From: Antechinus flavipes
Taxonomy: Eukaryota
Assembly (NCBI RefSeq): GCF_016432865.1
Contig: NC_067398.1
Span: 48,670,001-48,734,000 of the forward strand
Reading direction: 5' to 3'
Length of the DNA: 64,000 nt
The notes under the pieces are model-generated. The model did no database searches. It was not told the origin of the DNA and worked only from the letters and a program-made list of their open reading frames with translations. The position numbers and the translations under genes were made by a program. Of this stretch, positions 4,582-40,096 are shown piece by piece. The stretch's first letter is position 1, and the number at the start of each line of letters is the position of its first letter.

Positions 4582-7500
4582 GTGAGGGCTGGGGGCGTCC
4601 GCTGGGGCCCTTGGGAGGATGGGAAGAGAGGCAGCCTTGCGGCTGAGAAGGAGTTGAGGTGTCTCGGCGGCTGAGGAAGCCCGGGGGTCGCTGGGGAGAC
4701 CAGGGCAGCTCTACCGGGGAGGAGCCCGGGAGGGCTGAGGGGGGTCCGGGCGCCGGGAGAGCTGCAGGAGCCAAGTCGCGGAGAGCGGATGGGGGACTTG
4801 GCAGAAGCGCCAGAGAGGATGAGGGGAGGGAATGGGGAGAAGCAAAAAATCGGGGACTCGGGGAAGGGAGGGAAGAAATAGAAAAAGGGAACCCGAGCTG
4901 GGGGCGGATGCACAGGGAGGTGGAGGGGCAAAGGCTCGTAGGGCGGATGTTGGAGAGACCATTAGACCGAGAGGGTGAAGGGGGCAGCCGGGAGGAAGCA
5001 TTGAGAGCACGGAATGGAGAAGGGGAAGTGAGCAGAGGCGAGGGCAGGCAGCAAAGGGCAGTTCCAAACCAAAGGGTTTGTAACTAGCCCCGCTTGTAAC
5101 AAGTGACCTTGGCTGAGTCATTTGCCTCTGCCTTAGTTTCGTCTTTTGTGCCACCCGCCCCCAGGGCATCAAAAGCAGCACTTTGGTAGGTTTTTGGGCT
5201 CCTAGGAAGTGACTTGTTATGGGAGGATGCTTTGGCCCAAGGGAGGCCTGTGGGGCAGGTTACCGGCCCCCTGGCGGAGAGGCTGTCACAGCTGGTCAGG
5301 TCCCTTGGAGCTGTTCCCTGCTGCGACTCCACAGTCCCGGTGTCTTCCTTGCAGACTGCCACTCTCCGCCCCTACCTGAGCGCCGTGCGGGCCACGCTGC
5401 AGGCTGCGCTCTGCCTGGAGAACTTCTCCTCCCAAGTGGTGGAGAGGCACAACAAGCCAGAGGTAGAAGTCAGGTAGGAGAGCCGGGGAGCTGGGGGGGG
5501 GGACCCAGGGGCCCGGTGGGACAGCCGCCCCAGCTTTTGGTGAGAATCCCAGGAGCGGCAGGGCCAGCCCGGCCTTCTATAAATGATCTCCCAGTTATCA
5601 CTTCCTCATTTTCCTTACTGTAAGTTCTGAGGGAGGGCAAAGTGAGTGACAGGAGCCCAAAGACATTTCAATGGTGAGTGCAAAAGTTATTCTGACTTGA
5701 TAAATCTTGGGCCACATTTCATGTTAGTCTTTCTCCCTGAATCTACTGTTAGGATGATCTCTCTGGTTCCTGTTTTGAAGCCTCTGAGTGGTTAGTTCCA
5801 CTGTGACCACCACCTTGTTCTTTATCTTAGTTGGAGATTATAGGACCTATGGTAGGGTTTTCTGGACTATGCTGTCCCTTCAGTGACAGAATCTTTGACA
5901 TTACATTTATAGGAGTAGCAAAGAACTCCTCTTGCAACCTGTGACCATCAGCAGGAATGAGAAGGAAAAGGTTCTGATTGAGGGTTCCATCAATTCTGTT
6001 CGGGTCAGCATTGCTGTCAAACAGGTAAGTTTACCACTTGAGGACTGTTTAAAACTAGAGACTAGATGTTAGAAAATCTGTATTACAGTGAAGTTACGGG
6101 ACCTTGAAATTTGAGAGATTGAGAAAAACGCTTGGGAAATGAAACATTGATATTTTCTGTGACCTAACTGCTTTAGGAAAGTAATTTTTTTAAAGTAATT
6201 TTCAACATTAACCCTTTGTGGAACCTTGTGTTCCAAATTGTTCTCCTTCCCTTTCCTCTCCCCCCTCCTCTTAGACAGCAAGTAATCCAATATATGTTAA
6301 ACACGTGCCATTCTTCTAAACATATTTCCACATTTATAATGCTGCACAAGAAAAATCAGATCAAAAAGGGAAAAAATAAGGGAAAAAAGCAAACAACAAA
6401 AAAAAAAGGTGAAAATGCTGTTGTTATCCACATTCAGTTCTTATGGTTCTCTCTTGAGTGCAGATGGTACTCTCCATCATGAGTCTATTGGAATTGGCTT
6501 GAACCATCTCATTGTTAAAAAGCATCAAGTACATCGCAATTAATCATCACATAATCTTATTGCTGGATACAATATTCTTTTGTTTCTACTCCAGGTTGTT
6601 ACTTTTTGCAGGCTATGACAGACAGAACCCTCAATAATAAGTCAGAACTACCTGTCCTGACTCTCAAGAGCTTTGTAAACCCAGGCATATCACAGACAAG
6701 GTTCTGTTTCTGTGAGCCTCAGTGAGGATAATACACTACGTACTTCGAAGTGTTCTTGTGAAGACCAACTGAAATAATATTACTATATTCAGTTTGCAAA
6801 CAAAATAATGCAAATATATGCTAATTTCTAATGATAACCCAAATTTAGCAGCAGGGTGTAGAACTGACAAGATGGGTCCAGTTCTTTTTCCTATTTTCTG
6901 GGGCCGAGCCTTTTGACTTTTAAGAGAAGATTATGAAGTGGTGCAGTGGACCTTGAATCAAGAAGGTCCATCCTCTTGAGTTCAAATCTGGTCTCAGACC
7001 CTTAATAGTTGTGACTCTGGGCAATCACTTTACCCTCTTTGCCTTAGTCCCTCATCTGTAAAAAAAAAAAAGAAACACACACACAGAGAAGAAAATGGCA
7101 CAACACCTTAAGCTTTCTTAAGAAAATCAAAAATGGGGTCACAAAGTGTCCAACATGATTGAAATTACTGAACAAAAACTCTTATGTATAATTTCATCTG
7201 GAGGAGCGACGTAGAACTAGTTTCCAGGAATGGAAATGGGTCATGTTAATTAACTTTTTTGCATCAGGGACCCCTTGGGCAGTCTATTGAAGCTCCTGGA
7301 CCCCTTCTCAATAGAATGTTGCTTAAATGTACAAAATCTAGAGGATTACAATAGAAAGCAATGACATCAAAATACAGATATGGAAAATATTAGAACATAT
7401 TCATCAACTCCAGGCTTGGAAATATCCTGTGTTCATGTAATATTCTTAAATTGTGGAGGACCTTCCCTAATATACTTAATATTCCTAATTTTTTTTAATT

Positions 7501-10500
7501 AAAGCTTTTTATTTTCAAAACATATGCATGGATAATTTTTCAACATTGACCCTTACAAAGCCTTATGTTCCAAATTTCCCCCTTCTTCCCCCCATCCTCT
7601 CCTCTAGGTGGCAAGTAATCCAAAATATGTTAAACATGTTAAAATATGTGAAACCAATATATGTATACATATTAATGCAATAATCTTGTTGCACAAGAAA
7701 AATCAAATCAAAAAGGGAAAAAAGAGAAAGTAAACAAAATGCAAGCAAACAACAGAATGAAAATGCTGATGTGAAATTCTTCTTATTCTTGAAGATTAGT
7801 TTCTTTCCTTTTGGTTTCCAAAAACTTGGGTTTAGAGACATTGCAGAACAGCCACCTCAGAATGGACAGCACTGTGGGGTTGAGTGTGAGAGATTGAAGA
7901 TCAAACCATTGTACTGTTCATTTTGTCCTATTATGCTGGCTTGTGGAAACCTGTTTTTTTGTTTTGTTTTGTTTTCTTTGTAATTGTTCTCTGTAGGCTG
8001 ATGAGATTGAGAAGATCCTTTGCCACAAATTTATGCGATTCATGATGATGAGAGCAGAGAACTTCTTCATCTTGCGTAGGAAGCCTGTGGAGGTGAGGTA
8101 GAGGCCTGGATCTGGAGCACTTACAACTCTTAGCACAGGAACACAGGAGATGCTCCCTCAAGGTTGGATTCATCAGAATAATGATTTCTGGGAAGAAACT
8201 CTAGACTCACTTCAGAGCTTCCACAAATGTCCATAGGCAACTTGAACCCAAAGAGTTTCCAGGGAGAGTAGCTGTAATTGGTGGACCTGGGTTCAGAACT
8301 TGATAGATTAATAACTTCTGGTCTGTATAGACAGGACCCTATGACCTTCCTGACTCAAAATGTGTTTCTCATTTTTTTTTTTTTTATTTGCTCATTTGTC
8401 CACTTTTCTCCATGACACATGAGAATTCCCAGTAGGATAAGAACAGTGTCTGATACAGCTTTTCTTGCATTCCAAGATTGTTTTTGGATCCATGATTGTC
8501 TCTGAAACCTCCGCCTTGGCTAGCTCTCAACCAGAGATCACCATCTTGAAATCTTCTTCCAGGCAGTAGTCAGTGAATTTTCTTCTTTTGTCTGGGAAGG
8601 AAAGGCATCTGAGGCTTACAGGAAGCTATTTTCTCAGCTTGAAGACTGTGGGAAATACAGAGAAGCAGAAGACAGTGGTTCCAGTGTTAAAGAATGTCTG
8701 ATCTAGTTGGGAATATAATTGTTTTTGTTTCATGTACTGTCATTCCATCTTCACAACATTGAGATATTTCCCCATTTTACAACTTAGGAAACTGAAGATT
8801 TGACACAAGGCACTCAGGCTAGTTAAGAGACTGATATGAGACCTGGACCTCCTGGCTTTCTCACTTTAATTTAGGGGTCTTTCCATTATACCATTCTATT
8901 AGCACTGCCATTAAAAAGGCTCTATATTTCCATATCTCTGCCTCTCTGGGCTTCATGAGATCTAAGGCTAGAAGAGGTCTCAGGAATCATTTAGTGGTTT
9001 TTCTCATTGAGACCTTGTGAATTTGTGATTTTCTTAGGATTGCTCAGCATCTCTGACTCCACGTCTAAAATTCGTCCTGATTACTCTTTTCCAGTTTCCA
9101 GATCTGCAAAATTTGTATGAGCTAATTGACCTCTAAAGATTTTGCATCTGTGAAGCCTGATGATTTTATGGCAGATGGAGCCACAGTTGCTCCAAAAGTT
9201 GGATTTAAGAAAAAAAATGCTTTAAAAACTTGTTAGGCAGAATAATCCTTACAAGATCAGTGCTAGAGAAAAGAAATTATTATTTAGCATGGTTTGTATG
9301 TTGTAATCAGTTTGAGAATACAGTTTTTTCTTCCAAATCACAACTTACACGCAGACATCTCATGAATATGCATTCAAAAGATGTAGAAAAGCTTTGGGTA
9401 GCCTTAGTACCCTCACCCTCACAAATCACTAGGGTCACTACTATATTAGAGGGTGAAAGATAAACAGCACTTGAGAAGGTAGAGCTTCAATGCTGCCCAT
9501 CTCTGTATAGAGAAATAATAGATCCAGTGATGATTGAGACATTTTGGGGGGGATCTTGACAATGCAAGACTTTTTTGCTTGGCTCTATTGTTCATAAGGG
9601 TTTTTTCCTTGCTTTCTGAGTTTTGAGGGTTTGGGGAAGGAGAAAGGCAGACTTTCATTGATTAAAAAAAAATTTTAAGAATTTTTTTTTTTTAAAGATG
9701 GGATGGATTAAGAGAGGATTCTTGGTCTTCAAGGGCTCCTGCTCTCCCTTCCTTACTACCAGCAACTAAATTGCTCATCTTTTTTTTTTTTCTGTTTCTC
9801 AGGGTTATGATATCAGTTTCCTGATTACAAACTTCCATACAGAACAAATGTACAAACACAAACTGGTGGACTTTGTCATCCACTTCATGGAGGAGATTGA
9901 TAAGGAAATCAGTGAAATGAAGCTGTCTGTCAATGCTCGTGCTCGTATTGTGGCAGAGGAGTTCCTCAAGAATGTGAGGATTTTGAAGACTTTACTCTTT
10001 TGCGGGAGGGGGTTCAGAAGACTGGCATAGAAGTCAAATTGCCTATTTGAGTAGAAAGACAATATTTAGAAAATGGTGGTTTTTTTTTCCCCCTGAAAAA
10101 TGAAGGAGTACCTGAGACTGTTTTCATGGAACTAGTTGCTTTAGACTTCTGGAGGCCAGAAAAGATGGAAGTATTTTATTCTTAAGACATCCCAGGAATT
10201 CTCCTATAGTGACCTAGGCCCAGCATATCAAACTTCTTGGCCAGGAAGTTGTTGCTTGCATTTCACTTGTATCCATCATGAGGGAACTTAAGTTGTGCTC
10301 TGCCAAGATAAATAGTAGTAACTATGGTTTGCATAGCATAGAAGTCATCCTGTATTTCCTTTCTGGCTTTTCTCTTTCAGGCTTAATGATTGTGATTTTT
10401 ACAGCCAGTCTTTAATTTTTTTTGTTTATTCCTTACAATGTTGTCCGTTTCTTTCTAGTTATAGGGCCCTTTAATGAGGGAATACTTAACTCCATACAAT

Positions 10501-12179: not shown

Positions 12180-13620
12180 AGCGATGGGGAAGAGGGGTGC
12201 GGTGCGTTGTGCGGGGCTGCCAGAGCACCGGCACAGCGGGCACCGGCACAGCGGGGCCCAGCTTTCCCCGCAGTTGAAGGAGGCGGTTGCCCGGGCCCAA
12301 TTCGGGAGCCTGCCGCTAACCTGTGAGCACCTCGGATGAAAACGGATCCGCAGCAGTCCCCGGAGCTTTTATCAGTTTCCATCTCTCCTCGGGTTCTGAG
12401 GTTGAGAGTTTGGGGCTTCAACCCCTTCTCTTCAGCTTTGTTGAAAGCTCCTCCGGGAGGAGTCGCAGCCTCAGTAAGGCGAGGCATCCTTCCCCAAGGG
12501 CATTTCGGAAGAAGGTTGCCGTACCCAGCAGTCTCCTGGGGCAAATCCCTCGGGAATGAAGCGCGGATCGAGGTGTCCGCGGAGGGCAAGGCGCCTCCAG
12601 TCCGCAGCGCCGGTCCGAACCTCCCCCTCCCTCCTTTATTGTGCCCCGGGGGGTGGTTTCCATAACTACGCTAAACAGAGGGCGGGGCCACGCTTGGGAC
12701 CAAAGCGGCCCGGGCCAGAGCCGGCTGGACGAACCCTCCCCCACCTCACCTCTCACGCAGAGGATCCGGCCTGTAAGGGGCGGCGAGGGACTTGGACCTG
12801 TTCTATGCAGGGCCTTGGGGCTGCTGTTCTCTTGGGGGGCGGGGAGCTCAAGACGGTGTACAAGGGGGACCCTTCCTGGTATGCAGAACAGAACCAGGCC
12901 GCTTGCAGCGGCGACCAGCTGTGCAAAGAGCCCGTTTGGCCGAGGGCGGGCTTCGATGCCGTAAAACCCCAGCGTCCCGGGACCCTAGAGCCACGGGGGG
13001 ACCTCCCCAAGCCATGGCGCTCGAACTGCTACTGGAGCCGAAACCGGCTATCGGGGGCCGCCTCGCCCCGCCTCCAGGCTCTGCATTGGCCTGGGATCGA
13101 GACGATGCAGTGGGGCTCCGGGAGCCTGAGCCGCAAGGCCACGAGCACCCCAAATGCGAGTCCGCAGAGTCGAGCAGGGTCCCGGGCCGCCCCGAGTCCC
13201 GGGGCTCCTGGACGCGGAGCCGCCACCTCCTCAACAAAGGCCCCCGAAGCCTACTCCAATGGGGCCGGGACCGCGGGGACCGTGGGAGTGCAGCCGCCCG
13301 CGGGAGTGCAGCCGCCCCCGGGCGGCCAGGGTGAGTCCCCCGAGCTGCCTTCCCGCCCAGCAGACAGCTCGGGGGCTGGGAGCCTGATCCAGGCTCCTCC
13401 GGCGCCCGTGGACCGCGATAGCAAGGCCAAGGTTCGCCGTCAGCCTCGGCCTGAGAACAGCGTTGTGCCTCCGAGGCGCCCGCACGCTCTGGACAAACTG
13501 CGGCACGAAGGTGAAGTCCAACGTGGGCCCCTGCAACTCCGCCTCTCTCTCCCCTCCCCCCTACCAAGAAAGGGGTGGGGGTGGAAGGTGTAGGCGCGGG
13601 TGGAGGGAAGGTGCGACCTC
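12180..13620. promoter_or_regulatory. CpG island at TTLL3 promoter / exon 1
   Basis: Dense CpG directly after the ARPC4 3' end, spanning the TTLL3 first coding exon. Confidence 0.85.
12805..13330 (+). CDS. TTLL3: TTLL3 exon 1 (long N-terminal extension)
   Basis: [15 protein letters not shown]...PSWY...LHWPG resembles the recalled mouse start MQGVSSALLLSAGQL...AWY...LQWPG. Donor G|gtgagt, phase 1, in frame with exon 2. Confidence 0.75.
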
Positions 13621-25600: not shown

Positions 25601-28600
25601 AACATGGGGAGATAACTGTTTTTAGGAGTTACATGGACAGTCTCTGGGTATGTGGAAGTAAATGAGATATCTGGGATTGAAAGGTCTTCCTAGGTTCCTA
25701 ACAGGGCCCTGTGGACAGATGAAAGGACAAAGGGACTACTTCCCAACCCCACTATGAGCACCTTATCATTTTCCCACAGTGAGGGGGCTGAGCTAAAGAA
25801 GATTGACTCTCAGATCCAGCGTTGTGAAGACATCCTTCAGCAGCTTCGAGCAGTGGTGCCTCAAATTGACATGGAAGGAGACAGAAATATCTGGATCGTG
25901 AAGCCTGGAGCCAAGTCTAGAGGTCGAGGTAAGGGAAAATAGAGATTTGGTGAGGGGAGAAAGGAATTATTGATCAGCAGGATTAGGTAGAGAAAAACCT
26001 CATGTCCTTCCCTGACATAATCTCTGAATCTCAGTGATGCAGATGAATAAATAAATATTTTGATTCATATAAAGAAATAAGCATCAGGATCCCAGTTGTA
26101 TTTAATTTTTGTAACAGAATCATAGCGCTGAGCTGTGTTCCCAATTTACTGCTACCAACTCTATTCACCAATCTGTAGAGCCTCATAGAATCATACAGTC
26201 TTTTCACTGGAAGAGATGATCGGCCTTAAGTGTGATATCTTAGAAGCTACACAAGACTTGAAGTTGAAGCTCTTGGACTTACCATACTGTGTGAACTTAG
26301 ACAAATCACTTCTCTTGGTCTGTCTCCTCCTCTGTACAATAGGGAAGATGATGGACCAGTTGAACTGTTACCAGATGTGATACTTTATCAGCTCTATCCT
26401 TCTTAGACAAGTCACTGGGTCACTGGTCTTCATCTCAGAAGCTGGTTTTTTATCCATAAAATGTGAATTTGCATTACTTAATTCACAGGCTTGTTATTAG
26501 TAAAGCATTTAGAAACTTTGTAAAGCACTTAGTAAATATGAACTATTCTGTCTCTGTTTCTACAATCTGTGGGGCCATCTATACTCATTGGATAATGGGC
26601 ATGGGCATGGGACTAGGGGAAGAGCTGCATGCCTGAGAACACTACTTGAGAGGGCTGAATTAGCTCCAGCATGTGACTAAATTTCAAATGTACCAGAAAC
26701 AGCATATTCAAAAATGCCTCCTCATCTTCAAAGTGTAATCACGTGGAGTGGCAACAGTATTTAATCCATTGTGTGAGATGATGAAATGGTACTAGAGATG
26801 GTTGGTGGGCCTCCTCATATTTGAGTGCATCCGTTCAGATGGATTTTATCCAAGAATTAGGCTTAGATCCCCTCCTTTTCTGAGGGAGGGGCAACTAGCT
26901 ATGCAGAACACTAACTACATAGTGTCAAACTTGATTGATGTATGAATTGGTTTTGGAAAAATGCCTTTCCTTCCCTCTCTTATCCTTTTTTTTCTCTAAA
27001 AAGGGATGGTATACTAAATGGAGAAGGATAGACTGGGAAATTAAAGTGATAGAAATTTTCCAAAATCAATAAACATTAAGCTCGTGTTTTATAGAAGGAA
27101 AAAACACAAAGCTTTAATGGGACACTGACTCAATCAAGTGTGGTATATGTTGCTCTGTAAGGAATTATAAATAGAAAGGATTCAAGATACAAGGGGGATG
27201 GGTATGAACTACTACAGAGCAAAGACAATAGAACCAAAAGAACAATGCATCCCATGCTTACCAGAGTGTAAAACATTAAAATGTTCCTATCCTGAATTTA
27301 ATTGCAAAGAATATACCTCTTCTCTTGAGACAGATGTATGGATTTTATAGATATATGCTATCATATGTGGTCACTTTGTAGAGTGGATTTCGTATTTTTA
27401 CTTATTTCAAGGCAAAATTTAATGGAGATAGGATGTACTCTGAGAAATTATGTTGGGGAAAACCCCACAAAAGTTATTAAATGGAAAAATTAGTCTTATA
27501 TACCTTACAATCAGGGCAGTTATGTGGCATGGTGGCTAGAACATGGAGCCTGAAATCAGGAAGACCTGAGTATAATTCAACATCAGAACCATGTGATCCT
27601 AGGCCTCAGTTTCTCATATGTAAAATGAGCTGGAGCAACCCCTCCTGGATCTCTGTCCAAAGAGAAAGAAATGGGATCATGAAGAGTCAGGAATGACCAA
27701 AGCGACTGCCCTCAGACTGGGAGAGCTCCACCTCAGGGATGCTAGTGCCCTGGCTCCCTGGGGATTCCCAGCATCTGAGCTCTGTTCTTCCCCTTTCCTT
27801 TCCTCTCCTCCCCTCTCCCAGGTATAGTGTGCATGGACCATCTAGAAGAGATGCTGAAGCTGGTGGACTGTGACCCCATGATTGTAAAAGATGGCAAGTG
27901 GGTGGTACAGAAGTATATTGAGCGGCCCCTGCTCATCTTTGGCACCAAGTTCGACTTGAGGCAGTGGTTCCTAGTGACTGACTGGAACCCACTCACTGTG
28001 TGGTTCTACCGGGACAGTTACATCCGCTTTTCTACGCAACCCTTCTCCCTCAGGAACCTGGACAGGTAAAGCTGGGGATGGAGGAGCTTAGGCCCAAGGA
28101 AGGTAGATCACAATGTTCCCCACTTCTCCTTAATTATTGGTTTCACCTCTTAGGTTTAGCAGGAAAGGGGGAAAGAATAGGACTACTGAGCAATTGAGAA
28201 CTGGGAGATCAGTGAAGGCTTAGATTGAATAGAGAGGTGACATGATATAGCAGACAGAATTCACAATTTGCTTTGAGAAGGGACCTTGGCCCCTTTCTTG
28301 ACTCAAACATTTCCTAGTTGTGTGACTTTTGGCAAATCATGTAACCTCTCAGCCCCATTTTCCTTAACTATAAAATGGGGATAATATTACTTATACTATC
28401 TGCCTCATGGGACTATTGTGAAGAACTTTGTAAATCTTGAATGTAAATGTGAATTATTATTACTAAGGGCTAAAGTAAGAAAGACTTGGAGTCTAATGTA
28501 ATTATTAACGTAGAACTACAAAATATTAGAATTTCGAAGAATTTGGAGACCAACTAGTGCAATGGCAGAAAGAGATTGAAATCAAGTAATTTGCCTAAGT

Positions 28601-31600
28601 TTAATTGCCCAGATTTTGCACCCAATTCTTGAGTTTAGGTTGCTGCCAAGTCCCTTTAGACTTAACTCTTCTCAAGTTAATAGTCTCTGAAAGCAATAGC
28701 TTACCTTGGGACTGGCTTGTAGAGAGCTGAACCTTCATTGGTTCTGGGAATTGTAAAGGATTTGACATACTGACCTTTTGGTCTAAAGCAGGAAAACATC
28801 CGATCTATCCAGAGCTAATTTTGAGTTCTTAAAGGGAGAGATGACCCAAGACTGGTCACTAGGGCAACTCTAGGTAGAAAACAACCAGAACCCACAGAAC
28901 CAGCTCAGAATTGGGCTCTATTATCTCTTCCCTTTCTTTATCCCCTCCTCCCAAGATGGCAAAGGAAGGAGAGGGCCTTAGTTTCTCCTCCTTCTCATTT
29001 AGTTCTGTGCATCTCTGCAACAACTCAATCCAGAAGCACTTGGAGAATTCTACCAGTCGTCACCCTCGGCTGCCCCCTGACAACATGTGGTGTAGCCGGA
29101 AATTTCAGGCTCACCTGCAGGAGGTAGGGGCACCTGAGGCTTGGAAAGATGTCATGGTTCCAGGCATGAAGGCTGCAGTCATCCATGTACTGCAGACTTC
29201 TCAGGACACGGTGCAATCCCGCAAAGGCAGCTTTGAGCTGTATGGGGCTGACTTCGTCTTTGGGGAAGATTTCCATCCCTGGCTGATCGAGATCAATGCC
29301 AGCCCAACTATGGCACCTTCCACAGCTGTCACCACCCGACTCTGTGCCGGGGTGCTGGCTGATACATTGCGTGTAGTCATAGATCGTCGACAAAACCGAA
29401 ACTGTGACACTGGTGCTTTTGAGCTTATTTATAAGCAGGTGAGATGCTCTGGAAACTTGAGGCCATCTAGCCTTCCCTTCCTTGGGTCTCCTGAGAGGAA
29501 AAGAAATATTATCCAACCTATAGTTCCTTCTTTTGAAAGGAACCCTTCAAAACTCTGATGTTCTGATCAACCTCTAGTGTGCAAGACACAAGAGAGAGAA
29601 TGTGCAGTGAGGATACAGGAAAGTATGATCACTCCTGCCCTCTAATGATTAGCTGAGGAAATGAAACATATATACATAGAAAAGAAAAATTAAAAGGGAA
29701 TACCTGACTGCTAAAAGATGAGCAAAGACATTAACACTAGAAGGAGCAGGTGTCAATTGATGCAAAAACATTAAAAAAAAATTTTTTAAATTATCTTACA
29801 ATAATTTCCTTTACCCTATACAAAAGCATTTAAAATACAATTGCAGGTATTACTTTACTTTGAAATAAATTTTTTCATTCTATTTCCATTTTCTTTGCCT
29901 TATGGGGGGAAAACACTTCTAGATTCTAACCCATCATCAAAAGAGCAAAGGAAAAAAAGATCCTTTTTGGCTAGGAAAAGTCCTCACAGTTGAAAAAGGG
30001 TCTGAACTGGGTTTTGGAGGAGGGATATAATTTTAGCGGTCAGAGCATACTCTTGGTAAGAAGAATGAAACCGAGGTCCTGAAAGCACAAGATGTTCAGG
30101 GACCAGTAAGTAGACTGGAAGCCTGTCTTATCTGACACTCACTTCAGCAGCTGGTCAACTCCCAGGTCCATAAGGCACAACTCTCATTTCTTTGGGTAGA
30201 GCACTTTGGAGAATAGAATCCCCTTCCTCTAACAGGGATGTACCTATTTTCCTCTCTTCCATCCTGATGTGACCTAGAGTCCCACAAAGTACCAAGTTAA
30301 TCTTCCCAGGAAAAGAGTTTCAGTCCTTAGCTCCCTCATGATTGTTTCTGCATGAGATAGAGAGAGAAAGGAAATTTCCTGGTGCTTGAGCCATCTATCC
30401 CACTAACATTTTTGCTCTCTAGGCAGCTGTAGAGGTACCCCATTATGTGGGTATCCGACTACTGGTTGAAGGCTCCCCTGTGAAGAAACCTCTGACTGTC
30501 CGTCCCCGAAGAGTACCATCTCGTCCACTGGTACGTCGACGCCTTAAGGACCCTAAGGAGGTAAAAGCATCCGTACCTGAGTCGCCTATGGAGCCCATAC
30601 CTGAGGAGGATCAAGAGTCTGATCCTGTGAAGACTAAAGAGTCTGTCCCTGGGGAAGCTAAAGAGTCTGTCCCTGGGGAGGCTAAAGAGTCCTTGCCTGG
30701 GGAGACTAAGGAGTCTGTGCCTGGGGAGGCTAAGGAGTCTGTGCCTGAGAAGACTAAGGAGTCTCTGCCTGAGGAGGTTAAGGAGTCTATGCCTGAAGAG
30801 GCTAAGGAGTCTATGCTTGAGGAGGCTAAGGAGTCTGTGCCTGAGGAGGCTAAGGAGTCCGTGCCTGAGGAGGCCAAAGAGTCCGTGCCTGAAGAGGCTA
30901 AGAATTCTGTGCCTGAGGAGACTAAAAATCCCATGCCTGTTGCTTCCAAGTTATTAGGGCTTTCCTACCATCACGGGAAAACAGGAGGCAGGAAGAACCT
31001 GGGGCCCATTGAGAAAACAGACTCTCTAACCTTGAGAAAGAAGAGAGTCATCAATAAACAATCTACGGAAACTATCCAGGCCAGTTTCCAGAAATGGGAC
31101 ATCCACAATCCCAAGTTAAACCAGCTCCTCAGTGCATCCGCAGCACACCTTACCAGTCAGGGCAGGCAACTTCACCCCATGAAACCTCAGCTGCTTCTGA
31201 AGAATCCTGTATCTCTAGGTAGGGGCTACATTTACGCCCTTAGCCCACTTCCTCTTACTCTCCACCACCCTCCCCTCCCTGAAGTCTATGACCAGTCTAG
31301 TTAGAATCACTGATGCTATAGGTATGACGTGTGACTGTAATGTAATGAGACTGGTTGATAAACACAAGCAGGAGAATATTAGCAGCACAGCACTTGGAGA
31401 TCAGTGACAGGTACAGGGCTGGCTTTGTGACTGACATAGAGTCAGACCCAGACTTGAGGCTCAGAGCCTCTAAAATGGGAATAAAATGTATCGTGCCCTT
31501 CTTTGAGGGTTAGGGGGTAGATCCAGTAAGATGATGCCTGTAAAGCCCTTGGTGAGTTATTTGACAAACATACTAGGACATAAGACATTCAAAAGAATAG

Positions 31601-33558
31601 TTTCTTACTCCTCACTTCAGTGAGCTCACTTTGGGAGGTTACATTTAATATTCCATCAAGGCTGCCATCACTCAAATTATTTTGGGAACTTTTCTTTGGG
31701 AATTGCCTTCAAAGCCAGGTTATGAGCTATATGAGGAAATCAGTCTCTTTACTTTATAGTCACAGCTCATTTTTAATCAAAAATGGTATTACCTAGCTTG
31801 ATCACCCACCTTCTTCATCAGACTTGGCTCCAAAAGGCTCTTGCCTGTTTCCAGAAATCAAACCCACCCTCAAAGGATGAAGATTTGCCACCTTTGAGGA
31901 TATTCAAAAGAATCTAACACAGGCTCTGAATGCAATTTCCAAAGAGAAGTTCCCAGTGTGTTGAGTAATGGTCTCTCATTGGAATGAATGTGTAGCCTCC
32001 TAAGTGACTACTTTGAAGGGAACAACCATTCATTTGGATACCTAAGTTCTGGTATGTTTGCAGCCCCTGCCATTCAGAGGGAGAGCAAACACACTAACAC
32101 ACAAACTTGAATAAAAAGTTAAGAGATGGAATTAGAGATATCAAATGAGTACGAAAGAAAAAAATGCAGGAGTCATTTCCTCAGTTTCTTTGCAGGGAAC
32201 ACAGGTTGGTCTATTTATAGACTTACTGGATATTGAGTTAGAAGGAACTTTAAACCTCATGTCACCTAGTCTGGCCCTTTCATTTCATAAAACTAGGAAA
32301 CTAAGACCCAGAATGGAGATGCGTTTTGCCTAAGGACACAGCACTATTTCTTGGATTTAGATCACCTTTGGGACTTTAGGGGGTCTCAGGAACATGGGTG
32401 AGATCTCCCATCTGTTGACTTACTATAGGAGGGTTTGGAGGGAAAGAGCAAATAAATCAGTCCACATACTGTTTCCAAGCAGATCCTACTAAAAGGTAAG
32501 TGCTTAGAGCTTTCTATGGGGTTTCCTCTGCTCTTTCTCACAACTTGCCATGTCTAAGCTAGGAGACACTCTATCTAAAAGCAGAAAAGAAACCCAAAAC
32601 TTCTAATTGCCCTGCTTCTCCTTAACCTTTCACAGAGTCAGAGGGATTACCTTGCCTCCTTGCGAAGCCTGTACTGCCAGATTCCCGAGTGCTCAACCCT
32701 CGTACCTTCGTTCTCAGACTGCAGCTCCAAAAAACACCCATTTCCTGCAAGAACCTCAGTGCCACAGGCAGGGCCTTGCTTATGTTCCCGGCTCATAAGG
32801 AGCCTGTTCCCAATTGTGGGAAGCAGGCCAAGGTGGGCCCCAAACCCTGAGGGGCCAGGGAGGGGGCTGATTTGTGCTAAAAACTGGGAGCATTTGGGGA
32901 GGGGGAGGGAGGGAAAAGGGTTTCTCATGGTCTAGGCTAAGCCAATGGGAGCTGACCCGTGCTTGGACCAAGCCCCTTGGCCCATGCCCCTTGGCCCCAG
33001 CAAGGTGTCCCCAATTTAGAGCCTTGATGGTGATCAAGCCCAAAGGAGTACAAGAGGCAAGTTATATTCTTTAGTTTCATCCCAAAGCTATTTCAGAGAA
33101 GTGGGAGGGAGAGAGGGAGGGAGATAACTGCCCCTTACTTAAACCCTTATCCCTTTTCCTGAGAAATTCCCATCAGCTTTTTCCCATAGCCTCAAATGGC
33201 AGTTTTAGATCACTCAGAACTCCATCCACCCAAACCACAGAAAAAGGAAACGCCTCTGGGCCCCATTTGCTCGAAGATGAAATGCAACTTCCTACCACCT
33301 TTAACAACTCGAAGCCCAGGCTTGATGGGCTTGATAACTGACCAAATTTTACTGAAGGCTTTTAAAAAGAGTACCCACATTCATGGCTCCTACTGGCACC
33401 TGGCTTCCAATCTTCACAAGTCTGGAAGGACCAGGAAAGAACTCCAGAAATTGGAGATCATGAAATTGGGACATTTTTGGCCATGCTTCTCATATTCCCC
33501 TCCCAAACTTAAATCCTGGCCAAAGAAGTTATCCTGGGTCGAAAATAAATGGAACTGA
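12805..33558 (+). CDS. TTLL3: Tubulin monoglycylase TTLL3 (14 coding exons, about 1205 aa model)
   Basis: join(12805-13330,14775-14875,15015-15189,15647-15714,15916-16044,16616-16730,17533-17655,18201-18390,25780-25928,27822-28065,29003-29438,30423-31218,32636-32832,33190-33558) = 3618 nt, phases close. TTL motifs [42 protein letters not shown] and WLIEINASP are intact. Confidence 0.93.
14775..14875 (+). CDS. TTLL3: TTLL3 exon 2
   Basis: actgtag|(G)[33 protein letters not shown]|gtcag. Confidence 0.9.
15015..15189 (+). CDS. TTLL3: TTLL3 exon 3
   Basis: atag|[27 protein letters not shown]...PEECDE-G|gtaag. Confidence 0.93.
15647..15714 (+). CDS. TTLL3: TTLL3 exon 4
   Basis: ctctag|[23 protein letters not shown]|gtaatg. 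Confidence 0.88.
15916..16044 (+). CDS. TTLL3: TTLL3 exon 5
   Basis: cctag|[43 protein letters not shown]|gtggga. Confidence 0.95.
16616..16730 (+). CDS. TTLL3: TTLL3 exon 6
   Basis: cctag|[39 protein letters not shown]|gtagg. Confidence 0.95.
17533..17655 (+). CDS. TTLL3: TTLL3 exon 7
   Basis: gcag|[25 protein letters not shown]...KCLE-G|gtaag. Confidence 0.93.
18201..18390 (+). CDS. TTLL3: TTLL3 exon 8
   Basis: ttccag|GVKHHKK...[21 protein letters not shown]...[14 protein letters not shown]|gtaag. A second in-frame AG lies 9 nt upstream. Confidence 0.9.
23420..24745 (+). mobile_element. Degenerate CR1/L3 LINE
   Basis: Ends ...gatgccttcaagcacagactaaataatcttttattgggaatgttatagag...ttcaggcatggtttagg, typical of an L3/CR1 3' end; boundaries approximate. 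Confidence 0.6.
25780..25928 (+). CDS. TTLL3: TTLL3 exon 9
   Basis: cccacag|(H)[50 protein letters not shown]|gtaag. Confidence 0.96.
26600..26860 (+). mobile_element. RTE LINE ORF C-terminal fragment (degenerate)
   Basis: cacgtggagtggcaacagtatttaatccattg...ggttggtgggcctcctc resembles the decayed RTE C-terminal coding region. Confidence 0.4.
27822..28065 (+). CDS. TTLL3: TTLL3 exon 10
   Basis: ctcccag|(G)[14 protein letters not shown]...[54 protein letters not shown]|gtaaa. Confidence 0.96.
29003..29438 (+). CDS. TTLL3: TTLL3 exon 11
   Basis: catttag|(S)[14 protein letters not shown]...[34 protein letters not shown]...AFELIYKQ|gtgag. Confidence 0.96.
30423..31218 (+). CDS. TTLL3: TTLL3 exon 12 (796 nt, with octapeptide repeat)
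   Basis: ctctag|[23 protein letters not shown]... open for 265 codons to CTA-G|gtagg (phase 1, matches exon 13). 5' end is homologous; the 3' boundary is inferred. Confidence 0.75.
30567..30926 (+). repeat. Coding 24-bp minisatellite (15 units, 12 well conserved)
   Basis: Consensus about gagtctgtgcctgaggaggctaag; core units run 30639-30926, three degenerate units 30567-30638. Confidence 0.95.
31590..32065 (+). mobile_element. Mariner transposase C-terminal remnant (MARNA-like)
   Basis: Translates (with stops) as [48 protein letters not shown], matching the mariner HPPYSPDLAPSDF motif; ends gactactttgaaggg. Confidence 0.8.
32636..32832 (+). CDS. TTLL3: TTLL3 exon 13
   Basis: tttcacag|(E)[54 protein letters not shown]...AK|gtggg; resembles recalled mouse FPSLHSKAWLPSPRVHRPQGRVLRLQ...KALSTTGKALMTLPTAK. 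Confidence 0.8.
33190..33558 (+). CDS. TTLL3: TTLL3 probable terminal exon 14
   Basis: tttttcccatag|PQMAVLDH...IMKLGHFW...WVENKWN*; phase 0 matches the exon 13 donor. Only weak similarity to the recalled human tail. AATAAA at 33544. Confidence 0.6.
   Translation, partial: PQMAVLDHSELHPPKPQKKETPLGPICSKMKCNFLPPLTTRSPGLMGLITDQILLKAFKKSTHIHGSYWHLASNLHKSGRTRKELQKLEIMKLGHFWPCFSYSPPKLKSWPKKLSWVENKWN
33544..33549 (+). terminator. TTLL3 polyadenylation signal inside the last codons
   Basis: GAA AAT AAA TGG AAC TGA, followed by T/GT-rich ttctgtttttgttatgtttactgttgg. Confidence 0.65.
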
Positions 33559-39439: not shown

Positions 39440-40096
39440 GTTGTTCTAAAGTTTCTTTTTTTCCCCTCTTCCTTTTCCTCTTCCTCCTTTTCCTCCTCCT
39501 TTTCTTCTTCCTCCTCCTCTTCTTCTTCCCCCTCCTCCTCTTCATCCTCCTCCTCCTCTTCTTCCTCTTTCTTTTCNNNNNNNNNNNNNNNNNNNNNNNN
39601 NNNNNNNNNNNNNNNNNNNNNNNNNNNNNNNNNNNNNNNNNNNNNNNNNNNNNNNNNNNNNNNNNNNNNNNNNNNNNNNNNNNNNNNNNNNNNNNNNNNN
39701 NNNNNNNNNNNNNNNNNNNNNNNNNNNNNNNNNNNNNNNNNNNNNNNNNNNNNNNNNTTTTCCTCCTCCTTTTCTTCTTCCCCCTCCTCCTCTTGTTCCT
39801 CCTCCTCCTCTTCTTCCTTTTTCTTTTCCTCCTCCTTTTCTTCTTCCCCCTCCTCCTCTTCTTCCTTTTTCTTTTCCTCCTTTTCCTCCTCCTTTTCTTC
39901 TTCCCCCTCCTCCTCTTCTTCCCCCTCCTCCTCTTGTTCCTCTTCCTCTTCTTCTTCCTTTTTCTTTTCCTCCTCCTTTTCTTCTTCCTCCTCCTCCTCT
40001 TCTTCCTTTTTCTTTTCCTCCTTTTCCTCCTCCTTTTCTTCTTCCCCCTCCTCCTCTTCTTCCCCCTCCTCCTCTTCTTCCTCCTCCTCCTCTTCC
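39440..40096. repeat. Polypyrimidine (TCC/TTC)n complex simple repeat containing an assembly gap
   Basis: Almost pure C/T on the + strand; N-run 39577-39757 (181 N). Confidence 0.95.
39577..39757. other. Assembly gap (181 N)
   Basis: Run of n in the sequence. Confidence 1.

What the first reader, a model, noticed from the sequence alone, without database searches (positions are those of the whole stretch)
30567..30926. Glu-rich octapeptide tandem array (ESVPEEAK x12-15) in the tail of the glycylase TTLL3
Seen: a frame-preserving 24-bp repeat, 12 clean units ([40 protein letters not shown]) plus 3 degenerate 5' units, with variants graded along the array as expected from local unequal crossover. 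It lies in one open 796-nt exon whose 5' end is homologous to TTLL3. Known: TTLL3 initiates glycine side chains on glutamates of acidic tubulin tails; the human and mouse tails as I recall them have no such array. Inference: the enzyme may carry its own Glu-rich pseudo-substrate or auto-modification tail, or a neurofilament KSP-like spacer. It may also be a coding VNTR in a cilia/sperm gene.
Basis: partly seen in the sequence, partly recalled or inferred. Interest (0 to 1): 0.72.

Follow-up and report, generated by a model that had tools for sequence, protein, structure and literature searches.

The report
Marsupial TTLL3 acidic octapeptide repeat
The 24-base repeat is real and is an old feature of the tubulin glycylase gene TTLL3 in every marsupial examined (absent in placentals), but this animal's own gene models splice it out through a newly created splice site, and nothing shows that it acts as a substrate mimic.

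Summary
There is a gap-free 24-bp in-frame array at 30567-30950: 3 degenerate units, 12 clean units and 1 degenerate unit, consensus ESVPEEAK. It lies in an open 796-nt exon (30423-31218) directly after the TTL catalytic core of TTLL3.

The window is identical to the Antechinus flavipes reference assembly.
- The array is routine in marsupials. NCBI TTLL3 models of 10 other marsupial species, from opossum and monito del monte to devil, koala and wallaby, carry it at the same place. The tail segment that holds it is 85-189 residues long across species (about 4-15 units). No placental TTLL3 examined has it.
- Both RefSeq models for this species leave the exon at 30560|30561 (GAG|GTAAAA), which makes the array intronic. 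The devil has GCA at that position, so a C>T change made this donor.

The frame is still fully open. Its protein-level rate of change equals the devil's (6 versus 6 changes), so a long-exon isoform probably persists.

The encoded segment is predicted disordered and has net charge -21. It is most likely a tolerated acidic spacer that evolves by gain and loss of units. The pseudo-substrate idea has no support. It is a modestly interesting new member of a known kind.

The parts
29001..29438 (+). Last exon of the TTL catalytic core of TTLL3. It ends ...ELIYKQ in phase 0, with a GT donor at 29439 (the start coordinate is approximate).
   Evidence: Pfam TTL at E 2e-36. 5vlq Xenopus TTLL3 at E 2e-70, with the crystal chain ending at this exon's end. 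tblastn of P0274 is 99-100% identical. Donor read.
30423..31218 (+). Long 796-nt tail exon as used in the TTLL3 models of the other marsupials. It has a basic stretch, the array, a second basic stretch and a conserved tail. The canonical donor GT is at 31219-31220, and the exon ends in phase 1.
   Evidence: Open frame. Orthologous models read straight through it and join ...NPVSL-E-PEGLPC. Splice sites.
30423..30560 (+). The only part of that exon used by the two RefSeq models of this species (XP_051837677.1 and XP_051837689.1): 46 codons ending ...RRRLKDPKE.
   Evidence: tblastn of P0274 residues 922-967 matches 30423-30560 at 100%, and the next match starts at 32633. The protein tails are printed.
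30561..30562 (+). Internal GT splice donor (GAG|GTAAAA), specific to the Antechinus lineage. The devil has GAG GCA here (Ala) and the Sminthopsis protein also has Ala. A C>T change at 30562 turned Ala into Val and made the GT.
   Evidence: DNA comparison of the window with L001. Three-way protein comparison.
30567..30638 (+). Three degenerate 5' units ([24 protein letters not shown]). They are position-for-position orthologous to devil units 1-3.
   Evidence: 21-22 of 24 bases identical to the devil unit at the same position.
30639..30926 (+). Twelve clean 24-bp units, consensus GAGTCTGTGCCTGAGGAGGCTAAG, which encodes ESVPEEAK.
30927..30950 (+). Degenerate last unit (NPMPVASK), 24/24 identical to the devil's last unit. 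Its final AAG supplies an AG (30949-30950) behind a pyrimidine-rich run. The bilby isoform X3 uses the orthologous site as an internal acceptor and skips the array in frame.
32636..32850 (+). Next exon in the canonical frame ([12 protein letters not shown]... to ...[10 protein letters not shown], stop at 32848-32850). This frame is conserved to placentals. An alternative donor lies at 32832|32833.
   Evidence: Sequence read. Orthologue models. Alignment A1.
32636..32935 (+). The same exon read in the other frame by the RefSeq models of this species (SQRDYLASL... to ...GKGFLMV, stop at 32933-32935). Koala isoform X4 uses the same frame after skipping the whole tail exon.
   Evidence: The called gene end in L002 maps to window 32935.
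33190..33558 (+). Alternative last coding exon ([15 protein letters not shown]... to ...ENKWN, then a stop), used in the sugar glider, brushtail possum, wallaby and opossum models.

Best explanation
The array is an old, marsupial-wide, in-frame 24-bp minisatellite inside the long 3' exon of TTLL3. It encodes a disordered, net-acidic octapeptide repeat, [E/D]-S-[V/M]-P-[E/G/K]-E-[A/V/T]-K. The repeat lies between two basic stretches, directly after the catalytic core and before the conserved C-terminal tail. It changes by gain and loss of whole units in its interior, while its edge units stay orthologous between species.

Its most likely role (inferred) is a length-tolerant acidic spacer that is dispensable for catalysis. 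At most it tunes how the flanking basic segments meet the acidic microtubule surface.

The species' gene models use this donor to skip both the array and the conserved tail frame. I judge it about 60% likely that the long, array-coding isoform is still made alongside the short one.

Shown here: the anatomy, the phylogenetic spread, the turnover pattern, the predicted disorder, and the origin of the donor. Inferred: the function, and the use of either splice form.
For: - Array statistics.
- Identity of the window: 0 mismatches over 22,380 bases to GCA_016432865.2.
- Same array at the same site in NCBI models of Sarcophilus, Sminthopsis, Macrotis, Petaurus, Trichosurus, Notamacropus, Phascolarctos, Vombatus, Dromiciops and Monodelphis. 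The segment from VEGS to GGRKNL is 85-189 residues long, and 173 in the window.
- It is included in about 55 of 62 isoform models.
- None of the 16 placental tails printed has it.
- A word search with the array alone returned only marsupial TTLL3s, plus a fly titin and a plant protein.
- Edge units are orthologous to the devil's, while the interior differs by a run of ESMPEEAK copies; the devil has 18 units and the window 16.
- AlphaFold gives pLDDT 37-45 over the array with no secondary structure.
- Charge counts are 37 acidic against 16 basic residues in the array, and 4 against 13 and 4 against 14 in the two flanks.
- Post-array dN/dS against the devil is 0.24.
- After the new donor, lineage-specific amino-acid changes are 6 in the window and 6 in the devil.
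- Donor origin.
Against: - No RNA evidence was obtained.
- Both RefSeq models of this species exclude the array. The genome paper reports 106 RNA-seq samples from 12 tissues including testis, so the long isoform may be rare or lost.
- Whole-unit changes of a 24-bp period keep the frame automatically, so frame preservation alone is weak evidence of selection.
- Codon-position bias among units is not significant (9, 6 and 14 differences at codon positions 1, 2 and 3).
- The substitution counts are small.
- No outgroup (monotreme or sauropsid) was seen, so gain in marsupials cannot be told from loss in placentals.
- The spacer function is pure inference.
Confidence: 0.7

Rival explanations
1. In this genome the array is no longer coding. 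The new donor at 30561 has taken over, and the rest of the old exon is a recently orphaned intronic relic that has not yet had time to decay.
For: Both RefSeq isoforms of A. flavipes use 30560|30561 and join to 32636. A 138-nt exon is a more usual size than a 796-nt one. By a simple count, the new donor matches the AG|GTAAGT consensus as well as the canonical one does, 6 of 8 positions each.
Against: The frame is open over all 658 bases after the donor, with only in-frame length changes against the devil. There is no excess of amino-acid changes on the Antechinus branch: 6 versus 6, where neutrality would predict roughly 3-4 times more. The RefSeq product loses the C-terminal frame that is conserved from opossum to placentals.
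Confidence: 0.35
2. This is the reader's idea: the Glu-rich array is a built-in pseudo-substrate or auto-modification site. It would mimic the acidic tubulin tail, occupy the active site or be glycylated itself, and so regulate the enzyme.
For: The array is net acidic (-21) and tethered next to the catalytic core. Other TTLL enzymes do modify Glu-rich repeats of non-tubulin proteins; for example RPGR-ORF15 is glutamylated by TTLL5 (PMC7970040; PMC13052805). The S, P, E and K positions of the unit are kept across all marsupials.
Against: No unit has more than two adjacent Glu. Every unit carries a Lys and a Pro, unlike tubulin tails. Copy number ranges about 4-fold between species and the array is absent in placentals, so no fixed stoichiometry or essential regulation is implied. 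Models in three species drop it. My paper search found no report of TTLL3 self-modification: the terms autoglycylation and auto-glycylation had zero occurrences in every paper listed.
Confidence: 0.08
3. The repeat is kept for its RNA. It would be a purine-rich (GAG/GAA/AAG) exonic splicing enhancer array that helps define an unusually long internal exon, with the peptide as a by-product.
For: The unit is GAG-rich and sits in a 796-nt exon. The exon shows several alternative splice choices across species: an internal donor, an internal acceptor and whole-exon skipping. This is my inference from established knowledge of purine-rich enhancers.
Against: Nothing here tests it. Placentals keep the homologous long exon without the array. 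The conserved positions follow the peptide register, with S, P, E and K conserved and the third, fifth and seventh residues free.
Confidence: 0.07

Closest known systems
TTLL3 of other marsupials (NCBI models such as XP_031810642.1 Sarcophilus, XP_074140075.1 Sminthopsis, XP_056660578.1 Monodelphis)
   Same: They have the same gene, the same exon and the same insertion point after the ...IYKQ|[13 protein letters not shown] basic stretch. They share the octapeptide motif, and the dasyurids share orthologous edge units.
   Different: Copy number and the favoured unit variant differ by lineage: ESMPEEAK in the devil, DSVPGEAK in the wallaby, ESVPKEAK in the monito del monte, ESMPKEAK in the opossum. 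Only Antechinus has the GT donor in front of the array.
RPGR-ORF15 Glu/Gly-rich repetitive exon, glutamylated by TTLL5
   Same: Both are purine-rich, repetitive, acidic, disordered coding exons in a cilia-related protein, and both connect to a TTLL enzyme (PMC7970040, PMC13052805).
   Different: There the repeat is the substrate of a different protein's enzyme and is recognised through a separate basic domain. Here the repeat is in the enzyme itself, is much less acidic per residue, and no modification has been shown.
Titin PEVK segment and similar entropic-spring or bristle repeats (neurofilament KSP tails)
   Same: The composition is similar: P+E+V+K make up 81 of 128 residues, or 63%. A fly titin is the best non-TTLL3 hit of the array (E 5e-6). 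The segment is predicted disordered with a proline every 8 residues.
   Different: The unit is 8 residues, not about 28. There is no KSP or SP kinase motif. The array is only about 130 residues long, and there is no evidence of a mechanical role.
Cornifin/SPRR (Pfam PF02389)
   Same: Both are proline-rich octapeptide-like repeats, and there is a weak Pfam hit in the window and in the Sminthopsis model.
   Different: The score is 20.1 bits against a gathering cut-off of 34.8, with no stretch passing on its own. The window's array is not a member.

Membership tests
TTLL3 (tubulin monoglycylase) gene | TTL ATP-grasp catalytic domain | tested here: met
   Pfam PF03133 on three exons, at E 2e-36, 2e-30 and 3e-06.
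TTLL3 (tubulin monoglycylase) gene | Closest solved relative is TTLL3 rather than TTL or a glutamylase | tested here: met
   5vlq (Xenopus TTLL3) at E 2e-70, against 2e-06 for TTL and 8e-05 for TTLL7.
TTLL3 (tubulin monoglycylase) gene | Orthology to annotated TTLL3 | tested here: met
   All exons of XP_051837677.1 (A. flavipes TTLL3 X1) map to the window with identical cores. The locus DNA is identical. ARPC4-like exons lie upstream at 5899-6069 and 9770-10027, which matches the ARPC4-TTLL3 neighbourhood I know from other mammals.
Coding minisatellite (in-frame tandem repeat in an exon) | Period is a multiple of 3 and the array lies in an open frame flanked by conserved coding sequence in the same frame | tested here: met
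   Period 24, no indels, and a 265-codon open exon with conserved flanks.
Coding minisatellite (in-frame tandem repeat in an exon) | Copy number differs between related species, with homogenised interior units | tested here: met
   The array-bearing segment is 85-189 residues long across 11 species. The devil interior holds six near-identical ESMPEEA[K/E] units that are absent from the window.
Coding minisatellite (in-frame tandem repeat in an exon) | Present in mature mRNA of this species | tested here: inconclusive
   The RefSeq models of this species exclude it. Runs X19-X22 hold 83-97% of the words of 30300-31400, but their kind is unknown and the intron flanks are covered too.
Coding VNTR (polymorphic within a species) | Alleles with different copy number in one species | tested here: inconclusive
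   Two devil assemblies give identical tails (P0153 and P0314). An older devil-like model (P0157) is 69 residues shorter. That is not a whole number of units, so it is more likely a collapsed assembly. No Antechinus population data were examined.
TTLL substrate-like acidic tail (tubulin C-terminal tail, RPGR-ORF15) | Runs of several consecutive Glu, or Glu-Gly, without interspersed basic residues | tested here: not met
   There are at most two adjacent Glu, and one Lys and one Pro per 8 residues.
TTLL substrate-like acidic tail (tubulin C-terminal tail, RPGR-ORF15) | Carries glycine or glutamate side chains | not testable with these tools
   This needs mass spectrometry or modification-specific antibodies.
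Cornifin/SPRR (PF02389) | Score at or above Pfam's gathering threshold | tested here: not met
   20.1 bits against 34.8.
Neurofilament-type KSP repeat | Lys-Ser-Pro phosphorylation motif in each unit | tested here: not met
   Units read K-E-S-V-P, and no KSP or SP occurs in the 12 clean units.

The most novel reading that the evidence does not exclude
A single C>T change in the Antechinus lineage created a splice donor. That donor now strips TTLL3, a sperm and cilia glycylase, of a repeat at least as old as crown marsupials and also of its conserved C-terminal tail. This would be a natural tail-less TTLL3 in a genus known for extreme sperm competition. It would also give a ready-made comparison (Antechinus against devil) for asking what the acidic array and the tail do, including whether the array damps microtubule binding by the flanking basic segments.
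Probability: 0.15. Interest if true: 0.55.

Novelty: new member of a known kind. Interest (0 to 1): 0.3.

Why it matters
TTLL3 starts tubulin glycylation in cilia and sperm flagella. Almost nothing is known about what its long, poorly conserved tail does. A clade-wide acidic repeat that varies about 4-fold in length between species, is absent in placentals and is dropped by alternative splicing in some species is a natural deletion series for that tail. On present evidence, though, it is an ordinary lineage-specific low-complexity expansion already present in public gene models. Its coding status in this particular genome is also in doubt.

Tried and rejected
- **Read laying.** No splice junctions could be read. 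After that I sent no DNA of 27893-27951 to any search tool. For the operators' information: the whole-protein look-up of P0274 and local scripts that held the whole window necessarily spanned the exon containing those places. The protein search used a sugar-glider protein region orthologous to it.
- **Representative search with the tail exon.** It gave one true orthologue, and the other 254 hits were unrelated E/K/P-rich proteins.
- **Word search with the exon alone.** It found nothing. Low-complexity candidates probably swamped it, so the blank says little.
- **Exact look-up of the ATG-started ORF 30588-31301 in public contigs.** It is not on record.
- **DNA of other marsupial loci.** Only the devil and Antechinus could be fetched. 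Isoform models were not on record for Sminthopsis, opossum, monito del monte, wallaby and bilby, and the sample files were too large for the sugar glider and brushtail possum. Codon-level tests are therefore limited to one species pair.
- **Outgroups.** Monotreme and sauropsid TTLL3 could not be brought into the top of any list.
- **Assembly artefact.** Rejected, because the devil shares the array with positional orthology.
- **Antisense or other-frame coding.** Rejected, because those open frames are a by-product of a stop-free unit.
Full report
**What is in the sequence**

Tandem Repeats Finder reports a 24-bp array at 30600-30925 with 13.6 copies, 85% matches and no indels. Read in register from 30567, it has three degenerate units, twelve clean units (30639-30926) and one further degenerate unit at 30927-30950. 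The consensus 24-mer, which encodes ESVPEEAK, matches nine times within 3 mismatches, all inside the array. A hundred shuffles of the window gave none. Neighbouring units are more alike than distant ones: 20.8 of 24 bases for neighbours, falling to 18 of 24. The 5' half carries P-G-E units and the 3' half P-E-E units.

**Gene context**

The array lies in an open frame, 30423-31217. It is preceded by a pyrimidine tract and an AG, and followed by a GT at 31219. Upstream exons on the same strand carry the TTL domain (Pfam E 2e-36 and 2e-30). The exon ending at 29438 matches the solved Xenopus TTLL3 structure 5vlq at E 2e-70. The crystal chain ends where this exon ends, so the array begins about 48 residues beyond the crystallised core. 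ARPC4-like exons lie upstream.

**Which genome this is**

A cluster look-up returned Antechinus flavipes TTLL3 isoforms X1 and X2. All of their exons map to the window. The fetched locus from assembly GCA_016432865.2 is identical to window 11556-33935 over 22,380 bases.

**Spread among species**

A profile-free search of the representative library with the tail exon gave one true relative, the sugar-glider TTLL3. Everything else was low-complexity noise. A word search seeded with that protein returned NCBI TTLL3 models of ten other marsupial species plus hundreds of placental models.

Every marsupial has the octapeptide array at the same place: devil, dunnart, bilby, sugar glider, brushtail possum, tammar wallaby, koala, wombat, monito del monte and grey short-tailed opossum. 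The array follows the conserved [13 protein letters not shown] motif and a basic stretch, and precedes a conserved [14 protein letters not shown] segment.

| Measure | Range or value |
|---|---|
| Length of the segment that holds the array | 85 residues (wombat) to 189 (devil); 173 in the window |
| Number of units | about 4 to 15 |

The motif keeps S, P, E and K at unit positions 2, 4, 6 and 8. Positions 3, 5 and 7 drift by lineage. The unit finder restricted those four positions, so the printed sequences are the better evidence.

Sixteen non-primate placental tails have no array. They show one short S-G-E-G-K-D-S-G stretch there, which MAFFT aligns to a single unit and which may be a proto-unit. 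A search with the devil's array alone returned only marsupial TTLL3s, a fly titin and a plant protein. From established knowledge, the opossum-Australasian split is the crown of living marsupials, roughly 70-90 million years old, so the array is at least that old. Without a monotreme or sauropsid sequence I cannot say whether marsupials gained it or placentals lost it.

**How it changes**

Against the devil locus (L001; about 92% identical over 5 kb including introns), the edges of the array are position-for-position orthologous.

| Window units | Devil units | Identity |
|---|---|---|
| 1-5 | 1-5 | 21-24 of 24 bases |
| 11 | 14 | 24/24 |
| 13-16 | 15-18 | 22-24 of 24 bases |

The interior differs. 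The devil has six near-identical ESMPEEA[K/E] units where the window has other variants. In total the devil has 18 units and the window 16. This is the usual pattern of unit gain and loss in the middle of a minisatellite with stable, decaying ends.

**Is it under constraint?**

dN/dS against the devil is 0.24 for the 88 post-array codons and 0.35 for the five 5' units. It is noisy (1.46) for the 48 pre-array codons (2 synonymous and 7 non-synonymous changes). Among units, differences from the consensus fall 9, 6 and 14 on codon positions 1, 2 and 3, which is suggestive but not significant. Keeping the frame is automatic for a 24-bp period and proves nothing by itself. Retention of the same peptide motif across all marsupial orders is the better argument for constraint at the protein level.

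**The splice twist**

Both RefSeq models for this species read ...RRRLKDPKE and then jump to SQRDYLASL.... On the window this is exon 30423-30560 with donor GAG|GTAAAA at 30561, joined to the acceptor at 32636. The next exon is then read in the other frame, to a stop at 32933-32935.

The devil has GAG GCA at this point, and the dunnart protein also has Ala. A C>T change at 30562 on the Antechinus branch made the donor. By a simple count against AG|GTAAGT, the new and the canonical donor (TAG|GTAGGG at 31219) each match 6 of 8 positions. The new one lacks the +5 G, but it defines a 138-nt exon instead of a 796-nt one.

Elsewhere, about 55 of 62 marsupial isoform models include the array. The exceptions are:
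- bilby X3, which uses an internal acceptor right after the array and stays in frame; the window keeps that AG at 30949-30950;
- koala X4, which skips the whole exon and uses the SQRDY frame;
- two intron-retaining fragments.

**Is the long exon still used in Antechinus?**

No direct test was possible. Runs X19-X22 hold 83-97% of the sampled words of 30300-31400. Their kind is unrecorded, and such shares imply that the intron flanks are covered too, so they do not discriminate.

The indirect evidence favours continued use:
- The 658 bases after the new donor have no stop or frameshift.
- The only length differences from the devil are one codon and two whole units.
- With the dunnart as outgroup, the Antechinus and devil branches each carry 6 amino-acid changes after the donor. 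A neutral Antechinus branch should carry several times more.
- The RefSeq product also abandons the C-terminal frame that is conserved from opossum to placentals.

Against this, the genome paper reports 106 RNA-seq samples from 12 tissues including testis (PMC9290055), yet no long-exon isoform was modelled. I put the long isoform's survival at about 0.6.

**What the peptide is like**

The 128-residue array has 37 acidic and 16 basic residues. The 48 residues before it and the 89 after it have 13 and 14 basic residues against 4 acidic each. AlphaFold2 with the 16-sequence alignment gives mean pLDDT 48 overall and 37-45 across the array, with no secondary structure there. P+E+V+K make up 63% of the array.

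**Mechanism**

The best-supported reading is a disordered acidic linker. Its length is free to vary and it is not needed for catalysis. From my own knowledge, the Xenopus core construct that stops before this exon was reported as active; here I only verified that the construct ends there. The linker may modulate how the flanking basic stretches contact the acidic microtubule surface, but that is inference.

The pseudo-substrate idea is not excluded, but nothing supports it. Units have at most two adjacent Glu, and each holds a Lys and a Pro. The array is absent in placentals, and it is dropped in some models. The nearest precedent for a TTLL acting on a Glu-rich repeat is TTLL5 on RPGR-ORF15, which involves two separate proteins (PMC7970040; PMC13052805).

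**Novelty**

The listed results of a full-text search combining TTLL3 with marsupial terms showed no paper that discusses TTLL3 in marsupials. The array is nevertheless already written into public RefSeq proteins of ten species. It is a new, undescribed member of a very common kind: a lineage-specific coding minisatellite in a disordered tail. The Antechinus-specific donor is the more interesting detail, and it is cheap to test with existing RNA-seq.

No N stretch was touched.

Noticed in passing
window 32579-32935 (+): The exon starting at 32636 is open in two frames for about 70 and 100 codons. The canonical frame (ESEGLPC... to a stop at 32848) is conserved to placentals. The other frame (SQRDY... 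to a stop at 32933) is used by the Antechinus RefSeq models and by koala isoform X4, and reads similarly in both species.
   Followed up: partly
window 12556-13512 (+): The first coding exon of the annotated TTLL3 is a single 319-codon, GC-rich, low-complexity N-terminal extension. Marsupial models are 1040-1270 residues long, against about 720-1170 in placentals. I did not check whether this extension is real coding sequence.
   Followed up: no
window 5899-6069 and 9770-10027 (+): ARPC4-like exons lie directly upstream of TTLL3. This is the same neighbourhood that gives ARPC4-TTLL3 read-through products in primate models, some of which carry Pfam PF05856.
   Followed up: no
window 39577-39757: A run of 181 N (assembly gap or masked stretch) lies downstream of the gene. 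I left it untouched.
   Followed up: no
runs X1-X18: Eighteen runs, 17 labelled organism B and one organism A, from nine studies each hold 12-14% of the words of 30300-31400. That is the share expected for a relative about 93-94% identical, so they may be devil libraries. If they are RNA, they could show the exon expressed in the devil.
   Followed up: no
P0157 versus P0153 (devil-like proteins): An older devil-like model has an array 69 residues shorter, with a broken unit (…GEAK-EAK-ES…). That is not a whole number of units, so it looks like a collapsed or gap-bridged short-read assembly rather than an allele.
   Followed up: partly
sugar-glider TTLL3 locus (no DNA held): A PseudoU_synth_2 gene on the opposite strand overlaps the 3' end of the sugar-glider TTLL3 locus. 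The same tail-to-tail neighbour probably lies beyond about 33.6 kb in the window.
   Followed up: no
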